Part shown: positions 3,552 to 58,551 of the stretch, piece by piece
Position numbering within the stretch: position 1 is the stretch's first letter
Layout of the letters: every line of letters starts with the position of its first letter
Origin: Camelus dromedarius
Taxonomy: Eukaryota
DNA: 64,000 nucleotides
NCBI RefSeq assembly: GCF_036321535.1
Contig: NC_087444.1
Location: forward strand, 68,386,001 to 68,450,000
Direction of reading: 5' to 3'
Translations under genes and position numbers: made by a program
The notes under the pieces: model-generated
Seen by the model: only the letters and a program-made list of their open reading frames with translations
What the model was told of the DNA's origin: nothing
Database searches by the model: none

Positions 3552-12714
<9,163 letters not shown>

Positions 12715-38380: not shown

Positions 38381-39310
38381 CCTCAAGACTTCTGTACAAT
38401 AATAAATGTTCTCATTATTAAGGCATTTTTACTTACTATTACTTTACTTGTAACAGAATGCACTCTAGTGACACCATCACACACGTACTGTGCTTGGCTG
38501 AATAATAACCCAACAAAGATACCCACACCATCCCTAGAAGTTATAAATATCTTGTACACACCAAAGGGACAGTGCTGTTGTAATTAAGGTTTATTGACTT
38601 TAAAATAGAGGCATTAACCTGGGTTGCTTGAGAAGGCCCAATCTGAACACATGAGTTCTTAAAAGTACAGAACTTTCTCAAGCTGAGGGCAGAAATGTGA
38701 CAGAAGAAGACGTGGGAGGGATTCCAGGCATGAAGAGGACTTGACCCACCATCGCGGGCTCTGAGGTAGAAGGTCCACTTACTGGGACCAGAAAGAGGTA
38801 GCCAAGAGCTAAGGACAGGTCTTCACAGCCAGCAAGGAAATGGGACAAGGCGCCTGACAACCGCAAGGAGCAGAATTCGGCCAAAAACTTAGATGGGTTT
38901 ACAAAGCCTCCAAAACAACCCAGTTGGCCACAGTATGACTCAGCATTGTGAGACCCACAGCAGGGGAACCAGGCGAGCTCACCCGATCACTGCCCTGTGG
39001 AAACGTGAGAGAAGGAATTCAACTTGTGTTGAGATGCTCAGTTTGGGACAATTTGTTAGGGCAGCAAAAGTAGACCAATCCTCACACACGCAGTCGCAGA
39101 CCACAAAGAGCATCTTTTCCTCATTGTTTATTTGCAAAATTTTTACAAAAGGTAGAAAAATAAACATTTTATTGGGTCTGAGTTTGAGAATTCATACACA
39201 TAAATACAAAAATAGTGACTTGCAGGCAATAAATTAAGAAAATGGTTCTGATGCATCAATACACAAATAACATGTAAGATGCTGGAACAGGTTGCAGGTA
39301 GATCTCAGGC

Positions 39311-40748
39311 TCAGACACACAGGTGTCCGCTGGCGACACATTTCAGGTCCCGGGTGAGGAGGCGGAAGAGGTTGAACATGACAGAGGCCTCGAGGCAGTC
39401 CTGGGACTCCTGTGGGAGGGGAAATGGCTCAGTGGTCCCCGTGCCTGGGCGCCCAGCTGCTCCCAGACATCAGTTTCCCCACCGCGGTCACTCACCTTCT
39501 TCGGGGCCTCCTGGAGCCGGTGCAGCCAGTGGTGGAGGCGGTCCCGGGGCCTGGGGCCTGCTGTGGGCTGAGCTGGGACCTGTGGGCAGAGGAGGGGGGT
39601 GTGAGGGGGTGAGGAAGGGCCTGGGACAGAGAGGGACATTCAGGAGGTCAGAGCCCAGACACGCTGCGGGTGGCCCGAGCACTCACACAAGCCTGGAGCT
39701 GGGAGTGGATGTGGCCCAGGGTGTGCAGGGGCTGGTCCAGGGTGCTGCCCAGGGATGAGTTAGCCATGGTCCCCAGGACGGCCAGGGTCAGGGCCACCTC
39801 AGCCTTCAAGGCCACGGGACGCTCCCACACCTGAGGCGGGGAGACAGGGGCAGGGGAGAGCTGCATGTGAGAGAGGACAAGGGAGGAGGGGCAGGTGGGG
39901 AGGACACAGGCAGGGACAGTTGAAGGGGAAGGTCAGGGTCAGGGGAGAGGCACAGCCGATGTGGTCAGCGGAGGGGAAGGGGTCGGGGACAGGTGGGCAG
40001 GGCGGAGAGAGGAGGAGGCGGGAGGAGGAGGAGGGGAGGGGCCGCCTGCAGAGCCAGGTGATCTGGGCCAGGTGAGGGCAGGTGGGCCTGACTCTCCGGA
40101 CTCACCTGCAGCTGCCTCAGGTCCCGGGTCCTGGGGAAGATGCGCGAGCTGCAGTTCCAGTCCTTCTGCAAGAGTGACTCTTCCTAGGGAGCAAGAGCAA
40201 GGTCAGCCCACAGCACGACCGAGGGGAGACCCCGGTGAGACTGGAGGGAGGCCGACCTCAGGAGGAGGGGAGGTGAAGGTCCAAAGGACGGCAGAGGCAC
40301 GACCACCACAGGAGGACAGGGCTCAGCCCTCTGCGGGGAGGGCGAGGGGCCGGTGAAGGGAGAGCAGGTCCCCCTTGAGCAGAGGAAGCCCGGGCACCCA
40401 CAGCGCGGGGGTGGAGGGGAGCCCACAGCAGGCGGGGCTGGGGGACACTCACAAAGGCGTCCTTGGCTCTCTTGAAGGCCTGCAGCTCTTGTGGGGACAG
40501 AGACTTGAACTGGGCCAGGTGGCAGCCCCTTGTGCCCGGGAGGGCCCTGAGGGGTGAGGGGACAGGAACTGCTCCTGTCCTGGTCAGCGCTGCGGTCATC
40601 AGCAACAGCCCCAGCAGGCAGCCCGAGGTCATGCCTGTGTTGTGGAAGGAGAGGAACGTGAGGGGACGTAGGTCACTGGGGACTGAGGGGAGGGCGTTTT
40701 GTGGGGCTCAGGTCCCGGGCAATGATGTCGGAGCTCACCCAGCTTCAT
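39311..40748 (-). CDS. IFNL3: Interferon lambda-3-like (IL-28B-like), left-arm copy
   Basis: Micro-exon 40748-40739 (MKL G), then exons 40634-40453, 40183-40106, 39830-39687, 39579-39496, 39409-39311. MTSGCLLG...GCHLAQFKSLSPQELQAFK...CLEASVMFNLFRLLTRDLKCVASGHLCV*; 194 aa from the ATG at 40632. Confidence 0.95.
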
Positions 40749-40967
40749 TCCTGGTCTCTGGTCTCTGGTCTCTGTCAGCAGGTGGGGGATCAAGTGTCCA
40801 CTCCGAGGCTGTCGCCTGAGATCTCTCAGTCTTGTTTGACGTCTCTGACCCCAGTCTTCTCTTCTGGACCTCAGCCCGCTGCTCTGTCCGAGTGTCTGAA
40901 CTTCCAGCTCCGTCTGAGGTCTAATTCCTGCCTGAGCTCCATGGTGCCGCTTTTAGCCTGTGCAGCT

Positions 40968-41103
40968 GGGCAATCCCAGCTGATGTAGGAAAAGTGAAAA
41001 CACAGCTAGAGGGTGACACCGGCCACCAGGGAGGCCCAGGCAGGAAAGCCCAGAGCAGGGCGGGGCCTGGGAGCCAGGTGAGCAGCTGAGTGAAAGAGAA
41101 ACT
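40968..41103 (-). promoter_or_regulatory. IFNL3 promoter module (left copy): ISRE, IRF-E/PRDI, NF-kB
   Basis: On the + strand: GAAAGAGAAACT 41092-41103, GGAAAAGTGAAA 40988-40999, GGGCAATCCC 40968-40977. Confidence 0.8.
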
Positions 41104-43555
41104 GACATCCATTAGGGCTCACCTCCAAGAAAGTGCGTTCTGAAGACAAAATCCAGGCTGGGGCAGCTGCAGCCCCACATGGGGGTGCCTTGTGCAGTGG
41201 CCAGGCTAGATCTAGGACTGGAGTGGGGAGGGGACAGAGGGATTCCTTTCTGCAGGATGCCCCAGTGCAGGGAGTGGAGGGAAAGAGCACGCCTAGAAGG
41301 AGTTGCCGGGAAGAACCTGGACCTTCCAAGTGGGAGGCTGTTTAGGTGATGGGAGAAGATCTGGGGGTGCTGCTGGGGGTGGGGAGAGAGAGTCAGAAGG
41401 CAAAACACACCCATTAAGAGAGAAGACCAGCTCCTCCCCACCTTTTGCAACCTGGTACAGACAAAGATGGAATGGGGGAGGAGGGGAGCCCGCACTAACA
41501 TCTCTAATTGTCCAGGCATAGAAGGACCCAGGAACAGGAGGCTCTGCTCTGGAATTGCGGGCCGACCAAGCCTTCAAGGGAACCAGCTTGGTTTGTGACA
41601 AACACCTTCATTCGTTCACCAAATATTTATTCAGCCACCACTTTGGGTCAGACCCTGTTCAAGGTGCCAGGGCAAGAGCACTGAAAAAAGAAAAAGACAT
41701 ACCACAATCCTTCATGGAGCTTTTTACTAGAGAGGAGGAACACACAGTGGAGGTCGGGGAGTTAGGCTTGTGGTGTGTATTGTGTCAGAGAACGTCAGAT
41801 AACAGAAAATGAAAAAATGAAACAGGGATGAGAGCAGAGTGCGGGAGGAAGTTTGCATTAAATGAGGTGTCTGAGAAATGACATTTAGGGAAAGACCTAA
41901 AGGAAGTGAGGGAGGGAGCTCTGTGAAGATCCGAGGGGGAGCATTCTGCGAAAAGGGAACAGTCAGTGCAAAAGGAAAACAGACACCACCGCCACCCCCA
42001 CTTTTGGTGTATGTCTCACCCTGTCACAGAGGCTTGGCCACAACGTGGTTAAATACCCACAATAGCACCAAGGACTTACTGTGCTTTGCCTACATGTCAA
42101 ATACAGATGGAAGTTTAGAGACTCAGAGAGGTTAAGAGACTTGTTCAAGGTCACACAGCAAATAACTAGTGAGGGCAGGATTTTAACTGAGTTTTGCCTG
42201 GCATCAGGCAATAACCACTGCACCCTCCAGCCTGACTGTAGCGAGACCTCCTGGACCTGGAAGTGATGGATTTCTTGGACAGAAGTTGCTGAGTCCTTTT
42301 TGACTGTTACTCCCACCCTCTCTTTCCCTCATTTTAATTCCAGGGAGAGGGTAGACTGAAATCCATGTTGGGGAATATCTTTGAGGTCTGATACGCAAAA
42401 ATGTTTTAAAATCAATAGCAGGGATGTGCAAGTCACTCCTGGTGTTCTGGTCAGTTTCTGTCACTTGGAGGAGGCCTTACCTCAGGGGAGGAGACAATGA
42501 AACAAGAATGAATTTTGAAAATTAACTTATTATCTCAAAATCCCTAGACATCATAATGTCTTTCTTAGAAAGAAAGCTCAGGGAGTGGTTAGGAACATGT
42601 GATCGAGAGCTGAAGACTTGGGGGCTCCTCACTAGCTGTGTGATCTTGGGAAACAGGCTTTGCAGTTGGCCACAAAGATTACCCATCCTGCCCAGATCTC
42701 GATGAATGTAAAAAGTACAATTGTTTGCACTTTTATGTGTGTGATTATTTCATGGAGACCATTTATTAAGATCATTCTGTGACTTCAGCTGGAAGCTTCA
42801 CGAGCACTATTTCAATGTGTATTACTCATGGCAAGGGACGTGTAATAATATCATGGCATAGAAGACTAAACGGAGGCTGGGTACACAATTAAGTGTCAGG
42901 GGCAGAACTGAAACTCAGGTCACCTGATTTCCCTCTCAGCATTTTGTGCTGTACAGTCACCCTCAAAATGATCACAGAGAAACAACCAATGCAAATGCAA
43001 TAATATTTAATAACTGGCGATAAATTAACCCAAGAAGACAAAAGAGCAAATATACATAGGAACTTCATAAATACAAAACACACAAAAGTAACGGAATTCA
43101 AAAAACTACTTAACAGAAGGACTCTTGCCCAGTCCCTCATGGAATGAGGTCTCCCCAGCAGAGAGATCCAACAGTCCCATATTCATGGAATGTCAAAGCG
43201 GGCACTGAAGGTTCAAAGCAGGCGTTGGAACCTGTCAAGGGACAGGGAGGTTTCTGTAACCACAGAAGTAGAAACTGGTCCATGGTACGTGGTGGTCAAC
43301 GACCAAGGTCGACACGGAATCCAGTCTTTTCCTGCCAGCCCGGGGCCCTGGAAGATCTTAGGGCGACACTTCCCACGGAAATAGAGCGGCTTCCAGGGGG
43401 AACTGGTTCTGGCCCTGGGAAAAGGGCGCCTCTGGCACCAGCGCAGGCGGGTGGAGGCTGAGAGACCCGCCGGGTCCAATGGGGCAGCGGAGGAGGGCGG
43501 CGCCCGCAGCCAGGCGACCTCGCAGCTTCGGGTCCCAGGCGGGGCCGCGGCGGGA

Positions 43556-44891
43556 TCACAGACAAGGTCCCGAGTTTGCCACCAGCCGCAGGTCCCACGC
43601 GAGCAGGCGCAGGAAGTTGAAGATGACTCTGGCTTCATGACACCGAGGCGACTCCTGGAACCCGGGAAGGAGGCAGAGCCGGGCTGAGTCAGGGCCCCCC
43701 CCCTGCACTCCGTCACCGCTCCAAGGCGCGCGCCCGGCCCGTCTCAGCCTCACACCGTCCTCCCTGCGGTCTAACCGCTTGACCGCCCGCTCCACTCACA
43801 GCTCTGCGAGTTTTGTGACGCCTCCTGGGCGGCCGCGGGGACTTCCTCCAGGAGCCTGGCCGGACCAGCTGGAGCTGGAGGGGAACCGCACGTAACTTGA
43901 AGACGGCGAAGAACGGAGCCTCCCTCCCAGGTGGCTCCGCCCCTCACCCTCCCAGCCGCAGACCCAAGCCCGGATTAGGGGACACCGAGCGAGCTGGGAG
44001 GGGTGCGGGGCCAGGGCGGGACCGGCACTCACGCAGGCCGCCACGTCCCGCCCCGCGGCCGTCAGCAGCTCCAGGGTCGGGCCGACGCCGGGGAACAGCT
44101 CCGGGCTCGGCAGGCTGCTCAGCACGGCCTGGGCGTCGGCGAGGCCGCGGGCCACCAGGCGGAGTCGGGCGCAGGACTGCGGGGACCGAGCGGCAGTTAG
44201 ATGGGGCCGCGCTCGGGGCCCAAGTCCCCAAGCCCCTGCCGGCCGCGGGCCTCACCGACGGCGGCGGAGGGTTCCTCCTCGGGTGGAACGAGCAGTTGCG
44301 CGGCCTCCAGCTCAGCGTCTCTTCCTCCTGCGGGACAAGGGCCGGGATGATGCTGGGGATCCTCGCGGATTCCTGCACGTGGATCGGAACTGGCCCTCAA
44401 GGTTGTGCTCATCGTGTCCTGACCAGAGAGCTCTCTGAAGGCGCGAGGCAGGCCTGAAATGCACCTGCGCTCCAGGTGCGGATCCTGCGCCGGGACGTGG
44501 AGCCGAGTCCACCTGAAGGGGGCGCCCCTCTGTGACAGCCACTAAGGCCCGGTATGAGCTGACCACCAGGGCGGCTGGAAAGATGTGATCTGAATTCTGG
44601 ACCCCGAGATCCAGGATGCGCCTGCTGGACGCTAGGACAAGAGGGCCCCTCGGGACAAAGGTTGTCGTCTCGGGACCCGGGGGCCCAGGGTCCGGGGGAC
44701 AGAGGCGTGTGGGCATCACTCACATAGCGGTTCCTCAGGGCCTTGGCTGCCTCCAGTGCCCGGGGATCCAGGGAGCGGTATTGGGAGAGGAGGCAGCGCC
44801 CGGGAGCCTCCACACCGGGGTCCACCGCCACGCCCGCTGTCACCAAGACCCACAGCCCCATGGCCACCGCGGCTGCGCCACTCGGCCCCAT
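43556..44891 (-). CDS. IFNL4: Interferon lambda-4, left-arm copy, intact 5-exon ORF, 185 aa
   Basis: Exons 44891-44724, 44327-44256, 44176-44033, 43874-43800, 43654-43556; all phase 0, GT-AG; same protein as the right copy. Confidence 0.95.
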
Positions 44892-46366
44892 CTCTGCTCC
44901 TGCAAGAGGCGACAGACGTCAGGGAGCCCAAGGAGAAAGCCCCCAAGTCCAAGCCCCTGCCTCTGGTCAGACTCGCAGAGGGATTGACGCTCAGAGGGCG
45001 GGCACTGAGCCCTCTCAGGGGGAGAGACAGGATGGGCCCGGACACCTACTCCTACCTTCAGCCTCTCTCCCCTCACTCCTCACCTACCATGTGTCTTCGG
45101 TGCCACTTGCTGCAGCAGGGCCTGCCTTCCAGTGTCCCCTGGGTGGTGTCCCGGGTGGTGTCCAGATTGTTGTCCACCTGGGACAGTGGTACCTGCACCC
45201 TCCATGGTGGCTCTTAAGTGAGGGGCTGAGAATGATGAGCAGCCGGGCTTCCCCATGCAGGTTGTTTCCCAACGTCATTGCTGGCCATTGATCGGCCTGG
45301 AGAGTTGCAGGCATGGTGTGAGGACTTTACCCGCTCGTGGGACAGTGCCAGCAATGACTCTACCCAAACTCTTCTGCCACCAGTTATTGTTTCTGTCCCT
45401 TTCTGTATCCTCTTGCTTTCTTTTCGTCACCCTCGGTTTCCTTATCTCTGTTGTATAATAATAACCAGCCCTTATACAGTGTTACTGTTACTAGGCCTTG
45501 TTCTAAGTAATTGATATGCACATGTCTCATTTAATGCTCAAAAAATAACACTGCCAGAATTTTTCTACCTCCAATTCATGGGTGGGAAAACTGAGCCACA
45601 GTAAAGGGAAGGAACTTTTCCAAGATACAAAGTAACTGGCAGAGGCAGGATTTGAATATATACTCAGTCCAGCCTCAAAGCTTGGTCTAACCCATTAACT
45701 CCCCCTATATATCTAATTCAATGCCTCCTTCTCTCTCTTCACTGTCTGTCTGTGTTTCATTCCATTTCTCTTTCATCCCTCTCTTTATGCCTCCCTTTTC
45801 TCTCTGTTGCTCAGTTCCTGGTTTTGTCTCTGTCCATGTCTAATTCCATCTTTCTTTTTCTAGCAAGCATTCAGGCCAGGGTCTTTCTGTCTGTCTCTGT
45901 CTCAAGCAGTCTCTTTGTTTTGAATGAAAAATGAAATCTACCACTTATCTTGATAAAATTAGCAATGCAGGATCATTGGTTAAAGCTTGAAAAATATAGA
46001 CATAATATAAGGGAGGAAAAAACCCACCCATAACTTCACCACCCACCTCTCTCCCCTCACCCCAGCTCTGGAACAATTTTTCCCATGTGTAGAAATGTTA
46101 AACATATTTATTTGTGCATATGTTTTCTGATTATCAAAGTAACACATTCATTATAAAGATACAGTCAATACAAAAACATACAACTTGGAGAGTTAAAGTC
46201 TTGAATCCCACTTCCTGGACGTAATCTTTTTAGTCATCAGTTACTATTCCTCTTTTTTTTTTTTTTCTCTCTCTCTCTCTCTCTTTCGATGAACAATTTC
46301 TCTCAAATTGAAACCAGGCTGTATAAAGTTTAGCAGCTTGCTTTTCGTGTCTTACCATTATCTCTT

Positions 46367-46751
46367 TTTTTTTCTTTTTCTTTTTTAACATTTTTTATTG
46401 ATTTATAATCATTTTACAATGTTGTGTCAAAGTCCAGTGTAGAGCACAATTTTTCAGTTATACATGAACATATATATATTCATTGTCACATTTTTTTCTC
46501 TGTGAGCTACCATAAGATCTTGTGTATATTTCCCTGTGCTATACAGTATAATCTTGTTTATCTATTCTACAATTTTGAAATCCCATCTATCCTTTCCCAC
46601 CCTCCGCCCCCTTGGCAACCACAAGTTTGTATTCTATGTCTGTGAGTCTATTTCTGTTTTGTATTTATGCTTTGTTTTTTTTGTTTTTGTTTTTGTTTTT
46701 GTTTTTTAGATTCCACATATGAGCGATCTCATATGGTATTTTTCTTTCTCT
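46367..46751 (-). mobile_element. Young 5'-truncated L1 3' end with a 15-bp TSD
   Basis: T-rich tail at the left and L1 3'UTR-like body (tagattccacatatgagcgatctcatatggtatt); TSD ttaccattatctctt at 46352-46366 and 46752-46766. Confidence 0.85.
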
Positions 46752-47339
46752 TTACCATTATCTCTTGTTTGCATTCCCCCACATCTTTAGTTATATTGTA
46801 TCAGTGAAGGTCCCTGCAGGAAACAGATGGCCCAGTCAGTTTAGGGTAACTTGAGGTGGGTTTAATACCAGGAGTATTTACAAACGGATTGGATAGTGAA
46901 GGAAACAGATGAGGAGTAGTGCAAGGCCTTGGGACCCACATGCATGAGGGTCTATCATCTGTAGGCCTGAACAAAAGGGAGGGAAGGGAGTGGTTACTTG
47001 ACCTGGAAGGGAGGGGTCAGGTACACAGGTGGAGGACACAGAGAGGTAGTGGTTGCCCTGAATGAAGGAAGCCTGGGGAGTAAATACTCTAACACTCTCC
47101 TTCTCTTCTCTCTGGCCCTACTCCTAGGCTCCCCATTGGCTGCACCCAACAGAAGCCAAAGGCCAGCTTCCTGGGGCCCAGAGGTGGGTGGAGAAGTGGG
47201 AGGGGCAAAAGGGAGACATCCCACCTATACCACTAGTAAGGCTTCCATTCTAACAGGATTATTGAATAACCATCCCCTATTGGTGAACATGAATGTTCTT
47301 TTCAGTGTTTTGTTAAAGTCATGGTTCTCAAGGCTAGGG

Positions 47340-48150
47340 GTGAGAAAGGAAGTAATTTTTCATTCTTTTAACAGTATCTTTCATAGGGCTGAAGTTTTAT
47401 ATTTTTCCATCTCATTGATTTTCTTCTTTTATGGATGATGCTTTCATGATTTTAATAAGTCATCACCTTGGTCCCTTACATTTTCTCCTATTTTACATTC
47501 TAGGAGTTTTATAGTTCTGCACTTCACGTTTAGGTCTATGATACGTTTTAAGTTAATTTTTGTGAAATGTGTAAGGTCTGTATCTAGGTTTTTTTTTTTT
47601 TCCCCTACGTGAAAGTTCTTTCAATACCATTTGTTGGAAAGACTATCTTCTCATCATTGAATTGCCTTTGTTCCTTTCTTAAAGACCAGTTGACTTTATT
47701 TGNNNNNNNNNNNNNNNNNNNNNNNNNNNNNNNNNNNNNNNNNNNNNNNNNNNNNNNNNNNNNNNNNNNNNNNNNNNNNNNNNNNNNNNNNNNNNNNNNN
47801 NNNNNNNNNNNNNNNNNNNNNNNNNNNNNNNNNNNNNNNNNNNNNNNNNNNNGTGAAAGCTATTCTGGGCTTTTTGGATCGCTGTATAAACTTTTACTTT
47901 GTCAATATTTACAAATTAACTTGCTGGGATTTTAATTGGATTGCAAGGAATCTATAGATTAAGTTGGGAAGAACTGACATCTTGACAATATTGAGTCTTC
48001 CTATCCAAGTTCATAGAGTATTTTCATTTTTAGATGTTCTTTTATTTCTTTCATCAGTCTTCCTCATATAGATCGTGTTCAGTATTTGTTAGATTTGTAC
48101 TTAAGCATTTCATTTTTGGGTGGTGCTGATGTAAATGGTCCTTTTTTTTA
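47340..48150 (-). mobile_element. Old L1M ORF2 fragments (spanning the N gap 47703-47852)
   Basis: Reverse L1 ORF2-like text (tttaggtctatgatac...caataccatttgttggaaagactatc; gaactgacatcttgacaatattgagtcttcctatcc). Confidence 0.6.
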
Positions 48151-49989
48151 ATTTCAAACTCAAATTGTTTATTGCTATTATACAAGAAAGAAATGGACCT
48201 TTGTATATTAACCTTTATCTGGCAACATTGCTATAATCACTTATGATTCAGAAATATGTTTTTAAATGCATAATATTAAATACACAGGACTATGAAGGAA
48301 ACTGACTATATTGAAACACAGTTACCAAAACATAAAAGCAATTTTGTGATAAGTAATACATATGCCTTTTTATTAATGTATTAAGTAACAAGATATTGCA
48401 ATGAGTTTAATAACTACTATACTTTTGTGGTAGTAATGAGAGTAAATGATATTTCAAGATGTGTGCCACATCGCTAACATGTTATGAAATATTTATGACT
48501 CCTTTTAGTGACAAAGTCACAGATTCTGCTAATACTATTGTGGTTTGTTACTTACATTCATCATGGAAAGAAATGCTAAATTTCAGTTAAGGTTAGTGAA
48601 GATGGAAATGCAGCTTTTTCTCATGTAAGTTCACCCTCTCCTGAATCCTATCATGGGGTGGTCCACGAACCCCAGGTTAAGCTAGATTTGCAGCAGTTAA
48701 ACAGAATGAAGTAGATCTATATGCACTGACATGGAAAAACTTTCAAGGCATATTACAGAGTGAAAAAAGTAAATTGCTGAACAATACACATGGTGTGACA
48801 CTCCTTGTGTTTATAAGTACTCACACATGCAAAAGCAATTCAGTGGAGAAAAATCGCCTATTCAACAAATAGTGCTGGAGTAATTGGACACCCATAGGCT
48901 AAAAAAATGAACCTTGACCTAAACCTCACATTAAAATAAAAATTAACTCAATATGTGACATGGACTTAAACATAAATTATAAAGCTATAAAACTTTGAGA
49001 AAGAATTATGAAAAACCTCTTCAGGCAATAGGAGGTGCTGGAAGCAGATTGAGGGAGGAAGGAAAGCAAAGTTGGAGTATTTATTCTCCCTTCTGGTTCC
49101 CTCCTGGCAGGGATAAGATCTGACAGTGGCTGGGTTCCTCTGTCTCCAGCCACACATCTCACCTAGGATGGTAACAGCTCTCCGTGTTGCCAGCCTCCAG
49201 GTGCATCACCGCCCTTTGTTGATTTCATTAATCCTACCCACTTTTTCCCAGGTTAAACATTTGAATAGGTCCCCTGCTTCCTGTACATATCGTTTTTTCC
49301 GGAGTTTGTTTAATTGAAATTTTTACTGAGATCATTGTAAGGTATCTCTGGGAAGCACATGGGAACCGAGGAGATGATCATGCATGCTGTTATAAGAAAT
49401 AATACAAAGAGATCCTGTACACTCTACCCAGCTTCCCCCAGTGGTCGCATCTTACAAAATTACAATATTACAACCAGGAAATTGAAGGATACAATCCACC
49501 CGTCTTATTCAGATAGCCCCTAGATGTTCATCTAAATTGTTGCATGTATCAATTGTTCATTCCTGTTTCATACCAGACTTTGCTTAATCGTTCACCCTTT
49601 GAAGGACCTCTGGGCTGTTTCTACTTTTCGGCTATTACTAATAATGCTGCAATGAACATTTGTGTTCAGATGACTGTGTGGACATCAGTTTTCATTTCTC
49701 TGGAATAAATACCCAGGAGTTCAATTGCTGGGTTGATGTGCAGTTGCATGTTTAGTTTTACAAGAAGCTGCCAAACTGTTTTTTGGAGGGGCTGTACAAT
49801 TTTTACATTCCTGCAGGTCACTTATGAGGGATCCAGTTTCTAGATTGTTTTTTAAGTTTTGCTCACAAATAAGTTCCCCAGAGCTTTTTTTGTTGTTGCT
49901 ATTGTCTCCTAAATTCTTGAAGCAGTTTTCTTTTAATAGAGTAAACATCTCAAACAGTGGATCTCAAGAAACTTTTCTGCGAGGATGAT

Positions 49990-50335
49990 ATTTGTCTTTG
50001 TCCAGTTGGGCTGCTTATAACAAAATACCACAGACTGGGGAGCTTAAAAACAACAGAAATTTATTTCTTACAGTTCTGGAGCCACGATCAAGGCACCAGC
50101 ATGGTCAGGTAAGAGCTCTCTTCCAGGTGACAAAATTCTCATTTGGTCCTCACATGGTGGAAGGGGGCGAGGGAGCTCTGTGAGGTCTCTTTTTAGGAGG
50201 ACTAATCCCATTTTTGAGGGCTCCATCTCATGCCTTAATCACCTCCTAAAGACCTCCACCTCCTAATACCATCACCTTTGTTGGTTAGGATTTCAACATA
50301 ACAATTTTTGAGGGGACATTCAAACCACAGCAGCC
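49990..50335 (-). mobile_element. MLT1 solo LTR
   Basis: gggctgcttataacaaaataccacagactggggagcttaaaaacaacagaaatttatttcttacagttctggag... typical of a reverse-oriented MLT1. Confidence 0.7.
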
Positions 50336-52594
50336 TGTATTAAATGTAATTTGTGATTGCACCTAACTCAAGCAAATAACCTGCATTGCAGTGCCCAGAG
50401 TTGAATCACTGATTATTGAGAACTTGCATCTGGTACTTTCCTGTGTCCAATCCCACTGCATTCCACTCTTCCTGCCGTTATCAATTTTACTTCCAGTTCT
50501 TCAGTCTTTGAAGACACGTGGTTTCACTTCAGCCCCATCATGTGTATCAGGACACTTTTGGTAGCAAAAATAAAAAACAAACAAACCAAAAGTCCAACTC
50601 AAGCTGGCTTGAACAATGGAGAACTTATGGACTTATAAAACTTAGAAGTCCAAAATTAAGGTGAGGCTGCAGGTAAAGTTTGATCCTGTAAGACATAGTG
50701 AAACTCCCAATTTTGTTTTATCTTGTTTTTTATCTTTCAGGTCTCCCTTCCACTGGTGGGAAGACTGCTTACCCTTATAATTCCAAGATGAGTGCTAGTG
50801 ATTCCCCTGGCTTCACACTTCATCCTTCTCCAGTAGGAAGAAGATAGCGTCTTTCTCCCAGGAAGTCCAGGATTGAGATTCATTCTGATTAGATTGGCTT
50901 AAGTCAAATCCCCAACCCCAAACCCAATCACCGTGGCCAGAGAGATGAACTAAAGTAAATGGCTGCAGCCAGGTCACATACCCCAATCCCAGGAATGCGG
51001 GGGGGTGGTCAAGTCACCTTCCTAAAACCATTTGGATCTGCAGTCAAAGTGGGGGATGCTGGGATGGGTGAGGGGAGAGGTAACAGAAGCTTGGAAAGTT
51101 TGCTGCATGGACACTTTGGAGGAAACTCTTCTAATGTTTCAGCAGAATTTCTCACGTGCTTTTTCAGAGTGCTTATGTTTCAACAACTTTGATGTTTCTT
51201 AAAACTTCTATGCCTTGGAATAGGAAAATATACACTGAAAAACAAAATAAGTTTCTCATATTAATGCTGAGGAAGACATATACCTGAAAAACAGCCATTA
51301 CTTTCCTGCAATTATCAATATTTATTAATGAACTTAATTATAATTAATTAAAGGTGGTCTCATATAGGAAGCTTGGCTGAACGTGCCCTGAACATACCTA
51401 AGCTATTCTGCACATGGATAGATCTGTCTATATAGATGAGAAATGGCAACACTAACCCAGACAGCCTGGGATCATATCTACAAGCTGTGTGATCTTGGGC
51501 AGACTCACAGCCTCTCTGTGCCTCAGTTTCCTCATCTATAAAATGTCAGCCAGTGAGAGGACCTACCTCACAGTGTTGCTGGGAAGAATAAAGCAGTAAA
51601 TATGTGAGAAGAGCTTAAAGCAGTGCCAAGCACACAAGAAGTGCTCAGTATGTATTAGCTATAATTATTATTGACAATGGTTGAGAAAAACATGTCTGCA
51701 ATTCCAACTTTCAACAGCAAACTAACAATAGTTTTATAATTGGTAAAGGCATAAATATCACTTAATAACAGACTAAGGAGGCCAGAGAGAGCTTGTCTAA
51801 GGTCTTGATGAGGAAAAAACCTGAGAAAACAGAGGAGAGCAATATTCATGCAAAGAACAAGATATAAAAAGACAGGGAGAGAAAGACAGGATATAATGAC
51901 AAGAAAAGAGTGATTGAAGAGAGAGCACAAGAAACCCTAGTATGAACTCCTGCAGGGCAGGCACTTGTATGGGGACCTCTGCCATGTTTGCAGCTTCCAA
52001 CAGGAGGAAATAGTCTGTTTTCAGTTCACTCTTAGAGTGTGAAAGAAAGAAAAACACACAGAAAAGATAAACAGAATCCTCAAAATGAACAGTAGTAATT
52101 GACCCAGGAGAGAGGGTCCGAGCAAAGTCATTGTTGACACTGTCGCACAAGCAGGTAAAGTCATCACACACTGGCCAGGATCCCACCCGGCCAGCAGCCA
52201 GCAATGGATGACGTTGGGAAACAACCTGCATGGGGAAGCCCGGCTGCTCATCATTCTCAGCCCCTCACTTAAGAGCCACCATGGAGGGTGCAGGTACCAC
52301 TGTCCCAGGTGGACAACAATCTGGACACCACCCGGGACACCACCCAGGGGACACTGGAAGGCAGGCCCTGCTGCAGCAAGTGGCACCGAAGACACATGGT
52401 AGGTGAGGAGTGAGGGGAGAGAGGCTGAAGGTAGGAGTAGGTGTCCGGGCCCATCCTGTCTCTCCCCCTGAGAGGGCTCAGTGCCCGCCCTCTGAGCGTC
52501 AATCCCTCTGCGAGTCTGACCAGAGGCAGGGGCTTGGACTTGGGGGCTTTCTCCTTGGGCTCCCTGACGTCTGTCGCCTCTTGCAGGAGCAGAG

Positions 52595-53929
52595 ATGGGG
52601 CCGAGTGGCGCAGCCGCGGTGGCCATGGGGCTGTGGGTCTTGGTGACAGCGGGCGTGGCGGTGGACCCCGGTGTGGAGGCTCCCGGGCGCTGCCTCCTCT
52701 CCCAATACCGCTCCCTGGATCCCCGGGCACTGGAGGCAGCCAAGGCCCTGAGGAACCGCTATGTGAGTGATGCCCACACGCCTCTGTCCCCCGGACCCTG
52801 GGCCCCCGGGTCCCGAGACGACAACCTTTGTCCCGAGGGGCCCTCTTGTCCTAGCGTCCAGCAGGCGCATCCTGGATCTCGGGGTCCAGAATTCAGATCA
52901 CATCTTTCCAGCCGCCCTGGTGGTCAGCTCATACCGGGCCTTAGTGGCTGTCACAGAGGGGCGCCCCCTTCAGGTGGACTCGGCTCCACGTCCCGGCGCA
53001 GGATCCGCACCTGGAGCGCAGGTGCATTTCAGGCCTGCCTCGCGCCTTCAGAGAGCTCTCTGGTCAGGACACGATGAGCACAACCTTGAGGGCCAGTTCC
53101 GATCCACGTGCAGGAATCCGCGAGGATCCCCAGCATCATCCCGGCCCTTGTCCCGCAGGAGGAAGAGACGCTGAGCTGGAGGCCGCGCAACTGCTCGTTC
53201 CACCCGAGGAGGAACCCTCCGCCGCCGTCGGTGAGGCCCGCGGCCGGCAGGGGCTTGGGGACTTGGGCCCCGAGCGCGGCCCCATCTAACTGCCGCTCGG
53301 TCCCCGCAGTCCTGCGCCCGACTCCGCCTGGTGGCCCGCGGCCTCGCCGACGCCCAGGCCGTGCTGAGCAGCCTGCCGAGCCCGGAGCTGTTCCCCGGCG
53401 TCGGCCCGACCCTGGAGCTGCTGACGGCCGCGGGGCGGGACGTGGCGGCCTGCGTGAGTGCCGGTCCCGCCCTGGCCCCGCACCCCTCCCAGCTCGCTCG
53501 GTGTCCCCTAATCCGGGCTTGGGTCTGCGGCTGGGAGGGTGAGGGGCGGAGCCACCTGGGAGGGAGGCTCCGTTCTTCGCCGTCTTCAAGTTACGTGCGG
53601 TTCCCCTCCAGCTCCAGCTGGTCCGGCCAGGCTCCTGGAGGAAGTCCCCGCGGCCGCCCAGGAGGCGTCACAAAACTCGCAGAGCTGTGAGTGGAGCGGG
53701 CGGTCAAGCGGTTAGACCGCAGGGAGGACGGTGTGAGGCTGAGACGGGCCGGGCGCGCGCCTTGGAGCGGTGACGGAGTGCAGGGGGGGGCCCTGACTCA
53801 GCCCGGCTCTGCCTCCTTCCCGGGTTCCAGGAGTCGCCTCGGTGTCATGAAGCCAGAGTCATCTTCAACTTCCTGCGCCTGCTCGCGTGGGACCTGCGGC
53901 TGGTGGCAAACTCGGGACCTTGTCTGTGA
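52595..53929 (+). CDS. IFNL4: Interferon lambda-4, right-arm copy, intact 5-exon ORF, 185 aa
   Basis: Exons 52595-52762 (MGPSGAAAVAMGLWVL...RCLLSQYRSLDPRALEAAKALRNRY), 53159-53230 (EEETLSWRPRNCSF), 53310-53453 (SCARLRLVARGLADAQAVL...DVAAC), 53612-53686, 53831-53929 (ESPRCHEARVIFNFLRLLAWDLRLVANSGPCL*); 558 nt. Confidence 0.96.
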
Positions 53930-54717
53930 TCCCGCCGCGGCCCCGCCTGGGACCCGAAGCTGCGAGGTCGCCTGGCTGCGGGCGCCGCCCTCCTCCGCTG
54001 CCCCATTGGACCCGGCGGGTCTCTCAGCCTCCACCCGCCTGCGCTGGTGCCAGAGGCGCCCTTTTCCCAGGGCCAGAACCAGTTCCCCCTGGAAGCCGCT
54101 CTATTTCCGTGGGAAGTGTCGCCCTAAGATCTTCCAGGGCCCCGGGCTGGCAGGAAAAGACTGGATTCCGTGTCGACCTTGGTCGTTGACCACCACGTAC
54201 CATGGACCAGTTTCTACTTCTGTGGTTACAGAAACCTCCCTGTCCCTTGACAGGTTCCAACGCCTGCTTTGAACCTTCAGTGCCCGCTTTGACATTCCAT
54301 GAATATGGGACTGTTGGATCTCTCTGCTGGGGAGACCTCATTCCATGAGGGACTGGGCAAGAGTCCTTCTGTTAAGTAGTTTTTTGAATTCCGTTACTTT
54401 TGTGTGTTTTGTATTTATGAAGTTCCTATGTATATTTGCTCTTTTGTCTTCTTGGGTTAATTTATCGCCAGTTATTAAATATTATTGCATTTGCATTGGT
54501 TGTTTCTCTGTGATCATTTTGAGGGTGACTGTACAGCACAAAATGCTGAGAGGGAAATCAGGTGACCTGAGTTTCAGTTCTGCCCCTGACACTTAATTGT
54601 GTACCCAGCCTCCGTTTAGTCTTCTATGCCATGATATTATTACACGTCCCTTGCCATGAGTAATACACATTGAAATAGTGCTCGTGAAGCTTCCAGCTGA
54701 AGTCACAGAATGATCTT

Positions 54718-54723
54718 AATAAA
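54718..54723 (+). terminator. Probable IFNL4 poly(A) signal (mirror at 42762-42767)
   Basis: AATAAA ~790 nt after the stop; ATTAAA at 54474-54479 is an alternative. Confidence 0.5.
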
Positions 54724-56381
54724 TGGTCTCCATGAAATAATCACACACATAAAAGTGCAAACAATTGTACTTTTTACATTCATCGAGATCTGGGCAGGAT
54801 GGGTAATCTTTGTGGCCAACTGCAAAGCCTGTTTCCCAAGATCACACAGCTAGTGAGGAGCCCCCAAGTCTTCAGCTCTCGATCACATGTTCCTAACCAC
54901 TCCCTGAGCTTTCTTTCTAAGAAAGACATTATGATGTCTAGGGATTTTGAGATAATAAGTTAATTTTCAAAATTCATTCTTGTTTCATTGTCTCCTCCCC
55001 TGAGGTAAGGCCTCCTCCAAGTGACAGAAACTGACCAGAACACCAGGAGTGACTTGCACATCCCTGCTATTGATTTTAAAACATTTTTGCGTATCAGACC
55101 TCAAAGATATTCCCCAACATGGATTTCAGTCTACCCTCTCCCTGGAATTAAAATGAGGGAAAGAGAGGGTGGGAGTAACAGTCAAAAAGGACTCAGCAAC
55201 TTCTGTCCAAGAAATCCATCACTTCCAGGTCCAGGAGGTCTCGCTACAGTCAGGCTGGAGGGTGCAGTGGTTATTGCCTGATGCCAGGCAAAACTCAGTT
55301 AAAATCCTGCCCTCACTAGTTATTTGCTGTGTGACCTTGAACAAGTCTCTTAACCTCTCTGAGTCTCTAAACTTCCATCTGTATTTGACATGTAGGCAAA
55401 GCACAGTAAGTCCTTGGTGCTATTGTGGGTATTTAACCACGTTGTGGCCAAGCCTCTGTGACAGGGTGAGACATACACCAAAAGTGGGGGTGGCGGTGGT
55501 GTCTGTTTTCCTTTTGCACTGACTGTTCCCTTTTCGCAGAATGCTCCCCCTCGGATCTTCACAGAGCTCCCTCCCTCACTTCCTTTAGGTCTTTCCCTAA
55601 ATGTCATTTCTCAGACACCTCATTTAATGCAAACTTCCTCCCGCACTCTGCTCTCATCCCTGTTTCATTTTTTCATTTTCTGTTATCTGACGTTCTCTGA
55701 CACAATACACACCACAAGCCTAACTCCCCGACCTCCACTGTGTGTTCCTCCTCTCTAGTAAAAAGCTCCATGAAGGATTGTGGTATGTCTTTTTCTTTTT
55801 TCAGTGCTCTTGCCCTGGCACCTTGAACAGGGTCTGACCCAAAGTGGTGGCTGAATAAATATTTGGTGAACGAATGAAGGTGTTTGTCACAAACCAAGCT
55901 GGTTCCCTTGAAGGCTTGGTCGGCCCGCAATTCCAGAGCAGAGCCTCCTGTTCCTGGGTCCTTCTATGCCTGGACAATTAGAGATGTTAGTGCGGGCTCC
56001 CCTCCTCCCCCATTCCATCTTTGTCTGTACCAGGTTGCAAAAGGTGGGGAGGAGCTGGTCTTCTCTCTTAATGGGTGTGTTTTGCCTTCTGACTCTCTCT
56101 CCCCACCCCCAGCAGCACCCCCAGATCTTCTCCCATCACCTAAACAGCCTCCCACTTGGAAGGTCCAGGTTCTTCCCGGCAACTCCTTCTAGGCGTGCTC
56201 TTTCCCTCCACTCCCTGCACTGGGGCATCCTGCAGAAAGGAATCCCTCTGTCCCCTCCCCACTCCAGTCCTAGATCTAGCCTGGCCACTGCACAAGGCAC
56301 CCCCATGTGGGGCTGCAGCTGCCCCAGCCTGGATTTTGTCTTCAGAACGCACTTTCTTGGAGGTGAGCCCTAATGGATGTC

Positions 56382-56535
56382 AGTTTCTCTTTCACTCAGC
56401 TGCTCACCTGGCTCCCAGGCCCCGCCCTGCTCTGGGCTTTCCTGCCTGGGCCTCCCTGGTGGCCGGTGTCACCCTCTAGCTGTGTTTTCACTTTTCCTAC
56501 ATCAGCTGGGATTGCCCAGCTGCACAGGCTAAAAG
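56382..56535 (+). promoter_or_regulatory. IFNL3 promoter module (right copy): ISRE, IRF-E/PRDI, NF-kB, TATA-like
   Basis: AGTTTCTCTTTC 56382-56393, TTTCACTTTTCC 56486-56497, GGGATTGCCC 56508-56517, CTAAAAG 56529-56535. Confidence 0.8.
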
Positions 56536-56736
56536 CGGCACCATGGAGCTCAGGCAGGAATTAGACCTCAGACGGAGCTGGAAGTTCAGACACTCGGACA
56601 GAGCAGCGGGCTGAGGTCCAGAAGAGAAGACTGGGGTCAGAGACGTCAAACAAGACTGAGAGATCTCAGGCGACAGCCTCGGAGTGGACACTTGATCCCC
56701 CACCTGCTGACAGAGACCAGAGACCAGAGACCAGGA

Positions 56737-58174
56737 ATGAAGCTGGGTGAGCTCCGACATCATTGCCCGGGACCTGAGCCCCACAAAACGCCCTCCCCTC
56801 AGTCCCCAGTGACCTACGTCCCCTCACGTTCCTCTCCTTCCACAACACAGGCATGACCTCGGGCTGCCTGCTGGGGCTGTTGCTGATGACCGCAGCGCTG
56901 ACCAGGACAGGAGCAGTTCCTGTCCCCTCACCCCTCAGGGCCCTCCCGGGCACAAGGGGCTGCCACCTGGCCCAGTTCAAGTCTCTGTCCCCACAAGAGC
57001 TGCAGGCCTTCAAGAGAGCCAAGGACGCCTTTGTGAGTGTCCCCCAGCCCCGCCTGCTGTGGGCTCCCCTCCACCCCCGCGCTGTGGGTGCCCGGGCTTC
57101 CTCTGCTCAAGGGGGACCTGCTCTCCCTTCACCGGCCCCTCGCCCTCCCCGCAGAGGGCTGAGCCCTGTCCTCCTGTGGTGGTCGTGCCTCTGCCGTCCT
57201 TTGGACCTTCACCTCCCCTCCTCCTGAGGTCGGCCTCCCTCCAGTCTCACCGGGGTCTCCCCTCGGTCGTGCTGTGGGCTGACCTTGCTCTTGCTCCCTA
57301 GGAAGAGTCACTCTTGCAGAAGGACTGGAACTGCAGCTCGCGCATCTTCCCCAGGACCCGGGACCTGAGGCAGCTGCAGGTGAGTCCGGAGAGTCAGGCC
57401 CACCTGCCCTCACCTGGCCCAGATCACCTGGCTCTGCAGGCGGCCCCTCCCCTCCTCCTCCTCCCGCCTCCTCCTCTCTCCGCCCTGCCCACCTGTCCCC
57501 GACCCCTTCCCCTCCGCTGACCACATCGGCTGTGCCTCTCCCCTGACCCTGACCTTCCCCTTCAACTGTCCCTGCCTGTGTCCTCCCCACCTGCCCCTCC
57601 TCCCTTGTCCTCTCTCACATGCAGCTCTCCCCTGCCCCTGTCTCCCCGCCTCAGGTGTGGGAGCGTCCCGTGGCCTTGAAGGCTGAGGTGGCCCTGACCC
57701 TGGCCGTCCTGGGGACCATGGCTAACTCATCCCTGGGCAGCACCCTGGACCAGCCCCTGCACACCCTGGGCCACATCCACTCCCAGCTCCAGGCTTGTGT
57801 GAGTGCTCGGGCCACCCGCAGCGTGTCTGGGCTCTGACCTCCTGAATGTCCCTCTCTGTCCCAGGCCCTTCCTCACCCCCTCACACCCCCCTCCTCTGCC
57901 CACAGGTCCCAGCTCAGCCCACAGCAGGCCCCAGGCCCCGGGACCGCCTCCACCACTGGCTGCACCGGCTCCAGGAGGCCCCGAAGAAGGTGAGTGACCG
58001 CGGTGGGGAAACTGATGTCTGGGAGCAGCTGGGCGCCCAGGCACGGGGACCACTGAGCCATTTCCCCTCCCACAGGAGTCCCAGGACTGCCTCGAGGCCT
58101 CTGTCATGTTCAACCTCTTCCGCCTCCTCACCCGGGACCTGAAATGTGTCGCCAGCGGACACCTGTGTGTCTGA
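56737..58174 (+). CDS. IFNL3: Interferon lambda-3-like, right-arm copy
   Basis: Micro-exon 56737-56746 (ATG AAG CTG G|gt), then exons 56851-57032, 57302-57379, 57655-57798, 57906-57989, 58076-58174; 194 aa from the ATG at 56853 (198 aa with MKLG). Confidence 0.95.
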
Positions 58175-58209
58175 GCCTGAGATCTACCTGCAACCTGTTC
58201 CAGCATCTT

Positions 58210-58317
58210 ACATGTTATTTGTGTATTGATGCATCAGAACCATTTTCTTAATTTATTGCCTGCAAGTCACTATTTTTGTATTTATGTGTATGAATTCTCA
58301 AACTCAGACCCAATAAA
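58210..58317 (+). terminator. IFNL3 AU-rich 3'UTR and poly(A) signal (mirror at 39168-39275)
   Basis: ATTTA at 58251-58255 and 58280-58284; AATAAA at 58312-58317. Confidence 0.75.
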
Positions 58318-58551
58318 ATGTTTATTTTTCTACCTTTTGTAAAAATTTTGCAAATAAACAATGAGGAAAAGATGCTCTTTGTGGTCTGCGACTGCGTGTG
58401 TGAGGATTGGTCTACTTTTGCTGCCCTAACAAATTGTCCCAAACTGAGCATCTCAACACAAGTTGAATTCCTTCTCTCACATTTCCACAGGGCAGTGATC
58501 GGGTGAGCTCGCCTGGTTCCCCTGCTGTGGGTCTCACAAGGCTGAGTCATA

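What the first reader, a model, noticed from the sequence alone, without database searches (positions are those of the whole stretch)
38934..58551. 19.6-kb interferon-lambda palindrome with ~99.9% identical 6.34-kb arms
Seen: 38934-45278 is the reverse complement of 52208-58551 across introns, old L2/MIR intergenic DNA and promoters. I found only three differences (38945/58540, 39004/58481, and a 9 vs 8 homopolymer in IFNL4 intron 4) from spot checks and the mirrored ORF track; this was not an exhaustive alignment. Established: human IFNL3/IFNL2 are also inverted paralogues subject to gene conversion. Inference: arm-to-arm conversion keeps two IFNL3 and two IFNL4 genes identical, as in sex-chromosome palindromes, doubling dosage. 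The spacer may also invert recurrently.
Basis: partly seen in the sequence, partly recalled or inferred. Interest (0 to 1): 0.85.

Follow-up and report, generated by a model that had tools for sequence, protein, structure and literature searches.

The report
Camel interferon-lambda palindrome, kept identical
A real 19.6-kb inverted duplication in the dromedary carries two identical IFNL4+IFNL3 interferon gene pairs that ongoing copy-correction between the arms has kept identical since before camels and alpacas split; this is the camelid version of the known human and mouse IFNL2/IFNL3 arrangement.

Summary
Arms 38934-45278 and 52208-58551 differ by two mismatches and one homopolymer base (99.95%).

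The N run at 47703-47852 is a mask, not a scaffold gap. A public long-read dromedary record is letter-identical to the window and has 150 called bases there.

Each arm holds an intact IFNL4 (185 aa) and an intact IFNL3 (194 aa).

The conversion reading is strongly supported. Wild Bactrian camel and alpaca assemblies have the same palindrome with the same outer boundary.
- In the 6.3-kb core, arms are 0-0.2% apart within a species and 2.3-2.5% apart between camel and alpaca. At 138 sites both camel arms differ from both alpaca arms.
- In the adjoining 540 bp, the arms are 15-17% apart and group by arm, not by species.

So this is an old duplication with continuing arm-to-arm gene conversion. 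It is not an artefact and not a recent duplication.

The spacer is inverted in the wild-camel assembly, which fits flipping between the arms. It rests on one assembly only.

The architecture is already described for human and mouse IFNL2/IFNL3 (about 6 kb, >97% identical, inverted). A minke whale shows it too. I rate it a new member of a known kind, of moderate interest.

The same stretch was also noted from another window of this scan (s1-196060).

The parts
38392..38933 (.). Outer old homology, A side. It belongs to the ancestral duplication and no longer exchanges with the B side.
   Evidence: It is about 85% identical to 58552-59121. The K2P distance between A and B is 0.17-0.20 in all three species, and sequences group by arm with support 1.0.
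38934..45278 (.). Arm A, the homogenised core of 6345 bases.
   Evidence: two mismatches and one indel against arm B.
39311..40632 (-). IFNL3-type gene, copy A. Five exons: 40453-40632, 40106-40183, 39687-39830, 39496-39579 and 39311-39409 (includes the stop).
   Evidence: All introns are GT/AG. The 194-aa product equals P0099. Pfam IL28A, E 5e-78.
43556..44891 (-). IFNL4 gene, copy A. Five exons: 44724-44891, 44256-44327, 44033-44176, 43800-43874 and 43556-43654 (includes the stop).
   Evidence: All introns are GT/AG. The 185-aa product equals P0104. The best solved structure is interferon lambda-4, 9bpu_C, E 2.4e-71.
43687..43695 (.). C-run in IFNL4 intron 4: nine C in arm A, eight in arm B. 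It is the only arm difference in the inner 6.27 kb.
   Evidence: Its length varies between assemblies: arm A of L010 has C8, and all CamDro3 copies have C9.
45279..52207 (.). Spacer of 6929 bases. It is AT-rich and non-coding, with LINE-like fragments. It contains the 150-base mask at 47703-47852. The first and last ~147 bases still show weak inverted homology.
   Evidence: The spacer is inverted relative to the flanks in C. ferus.
52208..58551 (.). Arm B, the homogenised core of 6344 bases.
52595..53929 (+). IFNL4 gene, copy B. Five exons: 52595-52762, 53159-53230, 53310-53453, 53612-53686 and 53831-53929 (includes the stop).
   Evidence: The product equals P0104.
56853..58174 (+). IFNL3-type gene, copy B. 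Five exons: 56853-57032, 57302-57379, 57655-57798, 57906-57989 and 58076-58174 (includes the stop).
   Evidence: The product equals P0099.
58552..59121 (.). Outer old homology, B side.

Best explanation
This is a genuine, old inverted duplication of an IFNL4-IFNL3 gene pair. It is the camelid counterpart of the human and mouse IFNL3/IFNL4 and IFNL2 arrangement.

**Mechanism.** Over a fixed 6.3-kb tract the two arms repeatedly copy-correct each other by non-allelic gene conversion between inverted repeats on the same chromosome. A new substitution is therefore either erased or spread to both arms.

**Extent of the tract.** It covers both genes, their introns, the 2.9-kb intergenic DNA, about 390 bp upstream of IFNL4 and about 380 bp downstream of IFNL3. 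It stops where the neighbouring sequence is already too diverged (about 15%) to pair. That explains why the outer boundary sits at the same base in three species.

**Spacer.** Crossing-over between the same arms can flip the 6.9-kb spacer.

**What is shown and what is inferred.** Shown here:
- the identity pattern and its boundaries;
- concerted evolution across species;
- intact genes in every arm examined;
- an orientation difference between assemblies.

Inferred:
- the molecular route of the conversion;
- that both copies are expressed and raise dosage;
- that the inversion is real and recurs.
For: 1. **Exact identity with step-like edges.**
2. **Source assembly is continuous.** The window is letter-identical to GCA_036321535.1, which has no N at the masked places.
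3. **Same palindrome elsewhere.** It occurs in C. ferus GCA_009834535.1 and alpaca GCA_048564905.1, with overall arm identity 97.9% and 97.7% and the differences concentrated at the same edges.
4. **Core distances (39005-45275).** Within a species the arms differ by 0.00% (dromedary), 0.19% (C. ferus) and 0.21% (alpaca). Between camel and alpaca they differ by 2.3-2.5%, whichever arms are compared. At 138 sites both arms of both camels differ from both alpaca arms. Five derived sites are shared by both dromedary arms and three by both C. ferus arms.
5. **Outer 540 bp.** A versus B is 15-17% in every species. Orthologues are 0.5-0.9% apart (dromedary-C. ferus) and 3.9-4.3% apart (dromedary-alpaca).
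6. **Trees.** The core groups by species (support 1.0 and 0.95). The outer flank groups by arm (support 1.0).
7. **Proteins.** Six amino-acid replacements in IFNL3 and six in IFNL4 separate camel from alpaca. All twelve are present in both copies. All 12 gene copies are intact.
8. **Boundary.** The first arm difference is at 38933 in all three species.
9. **Whale.** A minke whale assembly has the same head-to-head IFNL4 arms, at least 3.8 kb long and 99.74% identical. 5301 of 6297 core alignment columns align to the whale arm at >=70% local identity.
10. **Prior description.** The human and mouse arrangement is published in PMC2654155.
Against: - No read-level check was possible. The expected twofold depth on the arms, and reads spanning an arm, were therefore not seen directly.
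- No GC-biased substitution pattern was found in the core. W>S versus S>W was 10:22 on the camel branch and 28:19 on the alpaca branch.
- An older dromedary assembly (GCA_000803125.3) shows four arm copies instead of two. I read that as unmerged overlapping contigs, but the copy number has not been measured independently.
- dN/dS for IFNL4 between camel and alpaca is about 1 on only eight changes. Selection on the second copy is not demonstrated.
Confidence: 0.9

Rival explanations
1. Assembly artefact: the assembler wrote one arm's consensus twice, or duplicated a single copy, so the near-identity is not biological.
For: Near-perfect identity is what a copied consensus would give. The program's note suggested a gap between the arms. 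One older dromedary assembly is visibly mis-assembled here: four arms joined by noisy filler that is 88.6% identical with 93 gap openings. An old short-read C. ferus assembly holds IFNL3 on an isolated 5-kb scaffold.
Against: - The N run is a mask, and the source record is continuous.
- Four other assemblies from three species show two arms attached to two different flanks.
- Species-specific substitutions are present in both arms: 138 camel/alpaca sites.
- The variant at 38945 that distinguishes the arms recurs in a second dromedary assembly.
Confidence: 0.03
2. Recent, independent duplication in each lineage. This was the explanation preferred for human and mouse in 2009. On this view the arms are identical simply because they are young.
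For: PMC2654155 argued for independent recent duplications, because the copies cluster within species.
Against: - The duplicated block continues for 542 bases at 15-17% divergence, and that part is orthologous arm by arm between camels and alpaca.
- The core boundary is at the same base in all three species.
- Independent duplications would not recreate the same edges, or the same old flank, three times.
Confidence: 0.04
3. Identity is maintained by strong purifying selection on two old copies, without any sequence exchange.
For: Both gene pairs are intact, and interferon genes are functionally important.
Against: The identity covers introns and 2.9 kb of intergenic DNA. The core has changed by 2.4% between camel and alpaca, yet it changed in parallel in both arms, including 12 amino-acid replacements. 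Selection alone cannot do that.
Confidence: 0.01

Closest known systems
Human and mouse IFNL2/IFNL3 inverted segmental duplication (Fox, Sheppard and O'Hara 2009, PMC2654155)
   Same: Type III interferon genes lie in inverted orientation. Arms of about 6 kb, including introns and flanks, are highly identical, and a unique spacer of several kb separates them. The copies cluster within a species.
   Different: - Identity here is 99.95%, against >97% reported.
- The spacer is 6.9 kb, against about 10 kb.
- Both IFNL4-type genes are intact and identical. In humans the copy upstream of IFNL2 (IFNL4P1) is a pseudogene (PMC10517323), and the 2009 paper found mouse IFNL1 and IFNL4 to be pseudogenes (PMC2654155).
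- A retained 15%-diverged flank shows directly that the duplication is old and the identity is secondary. The 2009 paper left that question open.
Sex-chromosome palindromes maintained by arm-to-arm gene conversion (human and chimpanzee Y palindromes P1-P8; from my own knowledge, Rozen et al. 2003)
   Same: Inverted arms are about 99.9% identical or better around a unique spacer. Arms are more alike within a species than orthologous arms are between species. The structure is conserved across species. The spacer can invert.
   Different: This one is autosomal and much smaller (6.3-kb arms, against 9 kb to 1.45 Mb). It carries immune cytokine genes rather than testis genes. It sits in normally recombining DNA, so conversion is not a substitute for missing crossing-over.
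Minke whale IFNL4 head-to-head arms (L017, GCA_949987535.1) and clouded leopard IFNL4-like pair (L016, GCA_028018385.1)
   Same: Both have head-to-head IL28A-family genes inside inverted repeats. Whale: at least 3839 bases at 99.74% with a 5.7-kb spacer. Leopard: about 1.9 kb at 98.5-99% with a 7-kb spacer.
   Different: Only part of each locus was fetched. The leopard arms appear to cover the IFNL4-type gene only. I did not check whether those gene copies are intact.

Membership tests
Type III interferon (IL28A / IFN-lambda) protein family, Pfam PF15177 | A significant full-length match to the IL28A profile. | tested here: met
   P0099 (equal to the window's IFNL3-type product): E 5e-78, 260.8 bits. 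P0104 (equal to the window's IFNL4 product): E 1.5e-32, 113.1 bits. The cut-off is 27 bits.
IFNL4 orthologue (as opposed to IFNL1/2/3) | Closer to IFN-lambda-4 than to the other lambda interferons, and positioned upstream of the IFNL3-type gene on the same strand. | tested here: met
   The best solved chain is 9bpu_C, interferon lambda-4, E 2.4e-71. IFNL3 chains score E 8.5e-8 and IFNL1 E 6e-6. The gene lies 2.9 kb upstream of the IFNL3-type gene in each arm.
IFNL2/IFNL3-type inverted duplication of the type III interferon locus | Two lambda interferon gene loci inverted relative to each other, with kb-scale identity that includes introns and flanks. | tested here: met
   Arms of 6345 and 6344 bases are 99.95% identical, inverted, with a 6929-base spacer.
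IFNL2/IFNL3-type inverted duplication of the type III interferon locus | Orthologous chromosomal position (shared neighbouring genes with human 19q13). | not tested
   I did not identify the flanking genes in the window. No IFNL1-type gene lies within the 64 kb.
Palindrome maintained by arm-to-arm gene conversion (concerted evolution) | Arms are more alike within a species than orthologous arms are between species, with derived changes shared by both arms. | tested here: met
   Within-species distance is 0-0.21%, against 2.3-2.5% between camel and alpaca. There are 138 shared-derived sites. The core tree groups by species.
Palindrome maintained by arm-to-arm gene conversion (concerted evolution) | The duplication is older than the identity suggests: a part of the duplicated block escapes homogenisation. 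| tested here: met
   The outer 542 bases are 15-17% diverged and group by arm in three species.
Palindrome maintained by arm-to-arm gene conversion (concerted evolution) | GC-biased substitution pattern in the converted tract. | tested here: not met
   With the whale arm as outgroup, W>S versus S>W is 10:22 on the camel branch and 28:19 on the alpaca branch. This feature is common but not defining.
Palindrome maintained by arm-to-arm gene conversion (concerted evolution) | The spacer inverts through crossing-over between the arms. | tested here: inconclusive
   The spacer is inverted relative to the flanks in the C. ferus assembly. The inner 147 bases swap partners accordingly. This rests on one assembly plus a mis-assembled one, and no reads were examined.
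False duplication / collapsed-consensus assembly artefact | The copies are separated by a scaffold gap, are not reproduced in independent assemblies, and lack copy-specific flanks. | tested here: not met
   There is no gap in the source record. The structure is reproduced in C. ferus, alpaca and a second dromedary-like assembly, with distinct flanks.

The most novel reading that the evidence does not exclude
The interferon-lambda palindrome is a single structure that has persisted for roughly 70 million years or more across boreoeutherian mammals. Its conversion boundary is stable to the base over at least the camelid radiation.

In camelids, and probably in whales, conversion keeps two working IFNL4 genes alive, whereas humans have lost one copy and are losing the other.

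The 6.9-kb spacer between the two IFNL4 promoters flips recurrently by crossing-over between the arms, and may be polymorphic within camel species.
Probability: 0.3. Interest if true: 0.55.

Novelty: new member of a known kind. Interest (0 to 1): 0.4.

Why it matters
**An open question.** The 2009 description of the human and mouse locus could not decide between independent recent duplications and an old duplication disguised by gene conversion. The camelid locus keeps a diverged stub of the old duplication beside the homogenised core, so for this lineage the answer is the second one.

**Two intact IFNL4 genes.** Camelids carry two intact, identical IFNL4 genes. Humans are inactivating this gene, and its role is debated. 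Dromedaries are also the reservoir of MERS coronavirus, so their mucosal interferon-lambda repertoire is of practical interest.

**Practical warning.** The widely used older dromedary assembly reports eight lambda interferon genes here. That count is very likely twice the true number.

Tried and rejected
- **Read laying.** Depth, junction reads and spacer orientation in reads could therefore not be examined.
- **LINE test across the masked stretch.** I tried to judge continuity by asking whether both flanks belong to one LINE copy. The window holds no second copy long enough: the only match is a 191-base inverted fragment at 67.5%. The question was settled by length comparison with the source record instead.
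- **GC-biased conversion.** No consistent signal.
- **Dating with the whale flank.** The region downstream of IFNL3 does not align between camel and whale.
- **dN/dS.** Camel versus alpaca has too few changes: IFNL3 0.51 on 10 changes, IFNL4 1.16 on 8.
- **Expression.** RNA libraries hold 0.65-0.96 of the sampled words of the whole IFNL4 gene, introns included. That could be unspliced transcript or DNA carry-over. Without laying reads it says nothing firm.
- **P0003 look-up.** The alpaca 248-aa model had no exact record.
- **Four-arm layout of GCA_000803125.3.** I considered it as the true structure and rejected it. Its contig ends fall exactly on the repeat boundaries (45280, 39004, 58471, 52210). 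The joins are noisy, indel-rich filler. Four other assemblies show two arms.
Full report
**1. The observation**

A seed-and-extend search and a full local alignment of the window against its own reverse complement give one large inverted repeat.
- 38945/58540 (A versus C);
- 39004/58481 (C versus T);
- one base in a C-run at 43695 (nine C in arm A, eight in arm B).

That is 99.95% identity over 6345 and 6344 bases. There is no substitution at all between 39005 and 45275.

It continues outward for 542 bases (38392-38933 versus 58552-59121) at about 85% identity. It continues inward for about 147 bases at about 62%. The change from about 85% to 100% happens within a few bases.

**2. The N run**

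The program's note asked that the N run at 47703-47852 be tested first.

Locus L006, from the public dromedary assembly GCA_036321535.1 (chromosome CM070318.1), matches the window at 100.000% on every aligned segment. These total about 21 kb with no mismatch and no gap. L006 contains no N. The window's 150-N and 132-N runs correspond to exactly 150 and 132 called bases.

The flanks of the 150-N run are also exactly 150 bases apart in four other assemblies: a second dromedary-like assembly, the older dromedary assembly, C. ferus and alpaca.

The run is therefore a mask over continuous sequence, not a scaffold join. Both arms lie on one contig. The masked stretch lies in AT-rich, LINE-like, non-coding spacer, so no reading frame is at stake. 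I compared lengths only and did not read or use the masked letters.

**3. Gene content**

Each arm carries two five-exon genes with GT/AG introns and open frames.
- The outer gene encodes 194 aa, identical to the RefSeq camel 'interferon lambda-3' (P0099).
- The inner gene encodes 185 aa, identical to the camel 'interferon lambda-4' (P0104).

Both proteins match Pfam IL28A, at E 5e-78 and 1.5e-32. The 185-aa protein is far closer to the solved interferon lambda-4 (9bpu_C, E 2.4e-71) than to lambda-3 or lambda-1 (E 1e-7 to 1e-5).

The two IFNL4 genes are head to head, with 7703 bases between their start codons. The arms include about 390 bases upstream of IFNL4 and the whole 2.9-kb IFNL4-IFNL3 intergenic region. 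Both copies therefore have identical proximal regulatory DNA. A translated search finds no other lambda interferon gene in the 64 kb.

**4. Is it real?**

I used exact-protein look-ups instead, and fetched the locus from other public assemblies.
- A second assembly, GCA_048773025.1, is 99.97-100% identical to the window. It covers arm A and part of the spacer, in the same order.
- C. ferus GCA_009834535.1 and alpaca GCA_048564905.1 each contain the complete palindrome. Overall arm identity is 97.9% and 97.7%.
- When the six arms are aligned, the within-species differences pile up in the same outer 540 bases and beyond the same inner edge. The core is almost clean.

Twenty whole-genome runs also hold 99% of the sampled words of flank plus arm A. 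An artefact peculiar to one assembler is excluded.

**5. What keeps the arms identical**

The six-arm alignment separates two histories.

| Region | Within-species arm difference | Between species | Tree |
|---|---|---|---|
| Core, 39005-45275 | 0.00% dromedary, 0.19% C. ferus, 0.21% alpaca | 2.3-2.5% camel versus alpaca, any arm | groups by species (support 1.0 and 0.95) |
| Outer flank, 38392-38930 | 15-17% in every species (K2P 0.17-0.20) | 0.5-0.9% dromedary-C. ferus; 3.9-4.3% dromedary-alpaca, arm by arm | groups by arm (support 1.0) |

Further points on the core:
- At 138 sites both arms of both camels carry one base and both alpaca arms carry another.
- Five sites are derived in both dromedary arms, and three in both C. 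ferus arms.
- The first arm difference falls at position 38933 in all three species.
- At the protein level, six replacements in IFNL3 and six in IFNL4 separate camel from alpaca. Every one is present in both copies.

This is the standard signature of concerted evolution: an old duplication whose core is homogenised again and again in each lineage. A recent duplication cannot explain the shared old flank and shared boundary. Selection cannot explain parallel change in introns and intergenic DNA.

**6. Rough timing (inference)**

I take the camel-alpaca split as about 17 million years, from general knowledge. Their K2P distance in the outer flank is 0.040-0.044.
- The A/B distance of 0.17-0.20 then places the last exchange in that flank at very roughly 70-80 million years ago.
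- Zero substitutions in 6270 bases between the dromedary arms implies complete homogenisation within roughly the last 0.2 million years.
- The 12-13 differences in C. ferus and in alpaca suggest patchy, ongoing events, or some assembly error.
- With the steady-state relation used for Y-chromosome palindromes, the conversion rate would be of order 1e-5 to 1e-4 per base per generation.

**7. Edge behaviour**

The few arm differences cluster at the tract edges: 38945 and 39004 in the dromedary, 38974 in C. ferus, and 45213-45273 in the alpaca.

Across dromedary assemblies:
- 38945 is a stable difference between the arms;
- the T at 58481 is private to this haplotype;
- the C9/C8 run varies (arm A is C8 in GCA_048773025.1, and all copies are C9 in the older assembly), so it is either polymorphic or a homopolymer error.

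Effectively the dromedary arms are identical over 6.27 kb.

**8. Spacer orientation**

In C. ferus the flanks run one way while the arm-spacer-arm block aligns to the window the other way. Consistently, the weakly homologous 147 bases inside each arm swap partners. The C. ferus arm joined to flank A carries the dromedary B-side inner sequence (1.2% apart), and the reverse also holds (0.0%). The alpaca matches the window's arrangement.

This is what crossing-over between the inverted arms would produce. With the alpaca as outgroup, the C. ferus state would be the derived one. It rests on a single continuous-long-read assembly, so a mis-orientation cannot be excluded. The older dromedary assembly shows the same flipped state, but it is mis-assembled here and gives no support.

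**9. The conflicting dromedary assembly**

GCA_000803125.3 shows four arm copies and eight annotated IL28A-family genes. Three observations bear on this:
- Its pieces end exactly at the repeat boundaries (window positions 45280, 39004, 58471 and 52210).
- The pieces are joined by about 1.3 kb of indel-rich filler (88.6% identity with 93 gap openings; 96% with 42). The filler maps to the middle of an arm.
- Four other assemblies show two arms.

I read it as three overlapping contigs laid end to end and 'gap-filled'. Only read depth can finally settle the copy number.

**10. How it compares with what is known**

Fox and colleagues reported that in both human and mouse about 6 kb at IFNL2 and IFNL3 is more than 97% identical, exons, introns and flanks included. 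The loci are inverted with about 10 kb between them. The authors weighed independent duplication against gene conversion and preferred the former (PMC2654155). A duplicated IFNL4-type gene upstream of human IFNL2 is known as the pseudogene IFNL4P1, also called IF1IC2 (PMC10517323).

A clouded leopard showed arms of about 1.9 kb at 98.5-99%. 5301 of 6297 core alignment columns align to the whale arm at >=70% local identity.

The camelid structure is thus one more member of a known, widespread arrangement. What it adds:
- a very high identity;
- two intact IFNL4 genes;
- a preserved diverged stub that decides the duplication-versus-conversion question for this lineage;
- a possible spacer inversion.

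I found no paper on the camelid locus.

**11. Function**

That two identical gene pairs double the inducible output is plausible, because their promoters are identical. It is untested. RNA libraries contain most words of the IFNL4 gene, introns included, which is uninformative without read laying. dN/dS is underpowered. The palindrome could equally be a neutral, self-maintaining structure.

**12. Verdict**

The artefact and recent-duplication rivals are rejected. The inversion is suggestive only. I rate this a new member of a known kind, of moderate interest.

Noticed in passing
L001-L003, L011, L013, L014 (GCA_000803125.3, CM016635.2, 63904334-63958288): The older dromedary assembly holds four arm copies and eight annotated IL28A-family genes. 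The copies are joined by about 1.3 kb of indel-rich filler (88.6% and 96% identity to window 41502-42787), and the pieces end exactly at the repeat boundaries. This is very likely a false duplication that doubles the lambda interferon gene count. The derived protein entries are in public databases.
   Followed up: partly
window 35498-35629 and 47703-47852 (also 6438-6577, not checked): The two N runs correspond to exactly 132 and 150 called bases in the record that is letter-identical to the window. They are masks rather than scaffold gaps.
   Followed up: yes
L017:1-3839 and 9535-13372 (minke whale, GCA_949987535.1): Head-to-head IFNL4-type genes sit inside inverted arms at least 3.8 kb long and 99.74% identical, with a 5.7-kb spacer. 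The arm is cut by the end of the locus, so its true length is unknown.
   Followed up: partly
L016:717-2603 and 9597-11601 (clouded leopard, GCA_028018385.1): Two IFNL4-like gene models (210 and 193 aa) lie head to head in short inverted arms (about 1.9 kb, 98.5-99%). The arms seem to cover only the IFNL4-type gene.
   Followed up: no
L015 (C. ferus GCA_000311805.2, scaffold KB019634.1, 5044 bases): In the old short-read wild camel assembly, the IFNL3-type gene sits alone on a 5-kb scaffold. That is what a collapsed repeat arm would look like.
   Followed up: no
window 52560-53960: Several RNA-seq libraries (reproductive-tract and 'organism B' metatranscriptomes) hold 0.65-0.96 of the sampled words of the whole IFNL4 gene, introns included. 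This could be unspliced or intron-retaining transcript, or DNA carry-over.
   Followed up: no
window 47482-47670 and 48830-49015: A 191-base inverted match at 67.5% lies inside the spacer, next to the masked stretch. Both pieces look like fragments of LINE elements, not part of the palindrome diagonal.
   Followed up: no
The tool describes this as a filter that can trip by chance.
   Followed up: no
another piece of the same genome (note s1-193369): The scan also flagged a ~42-kb TAAR8-TAAR7 palindrome with near-identical genes in this genome. It may be a second case of arm-to-arm conversion.
   Followed up: no
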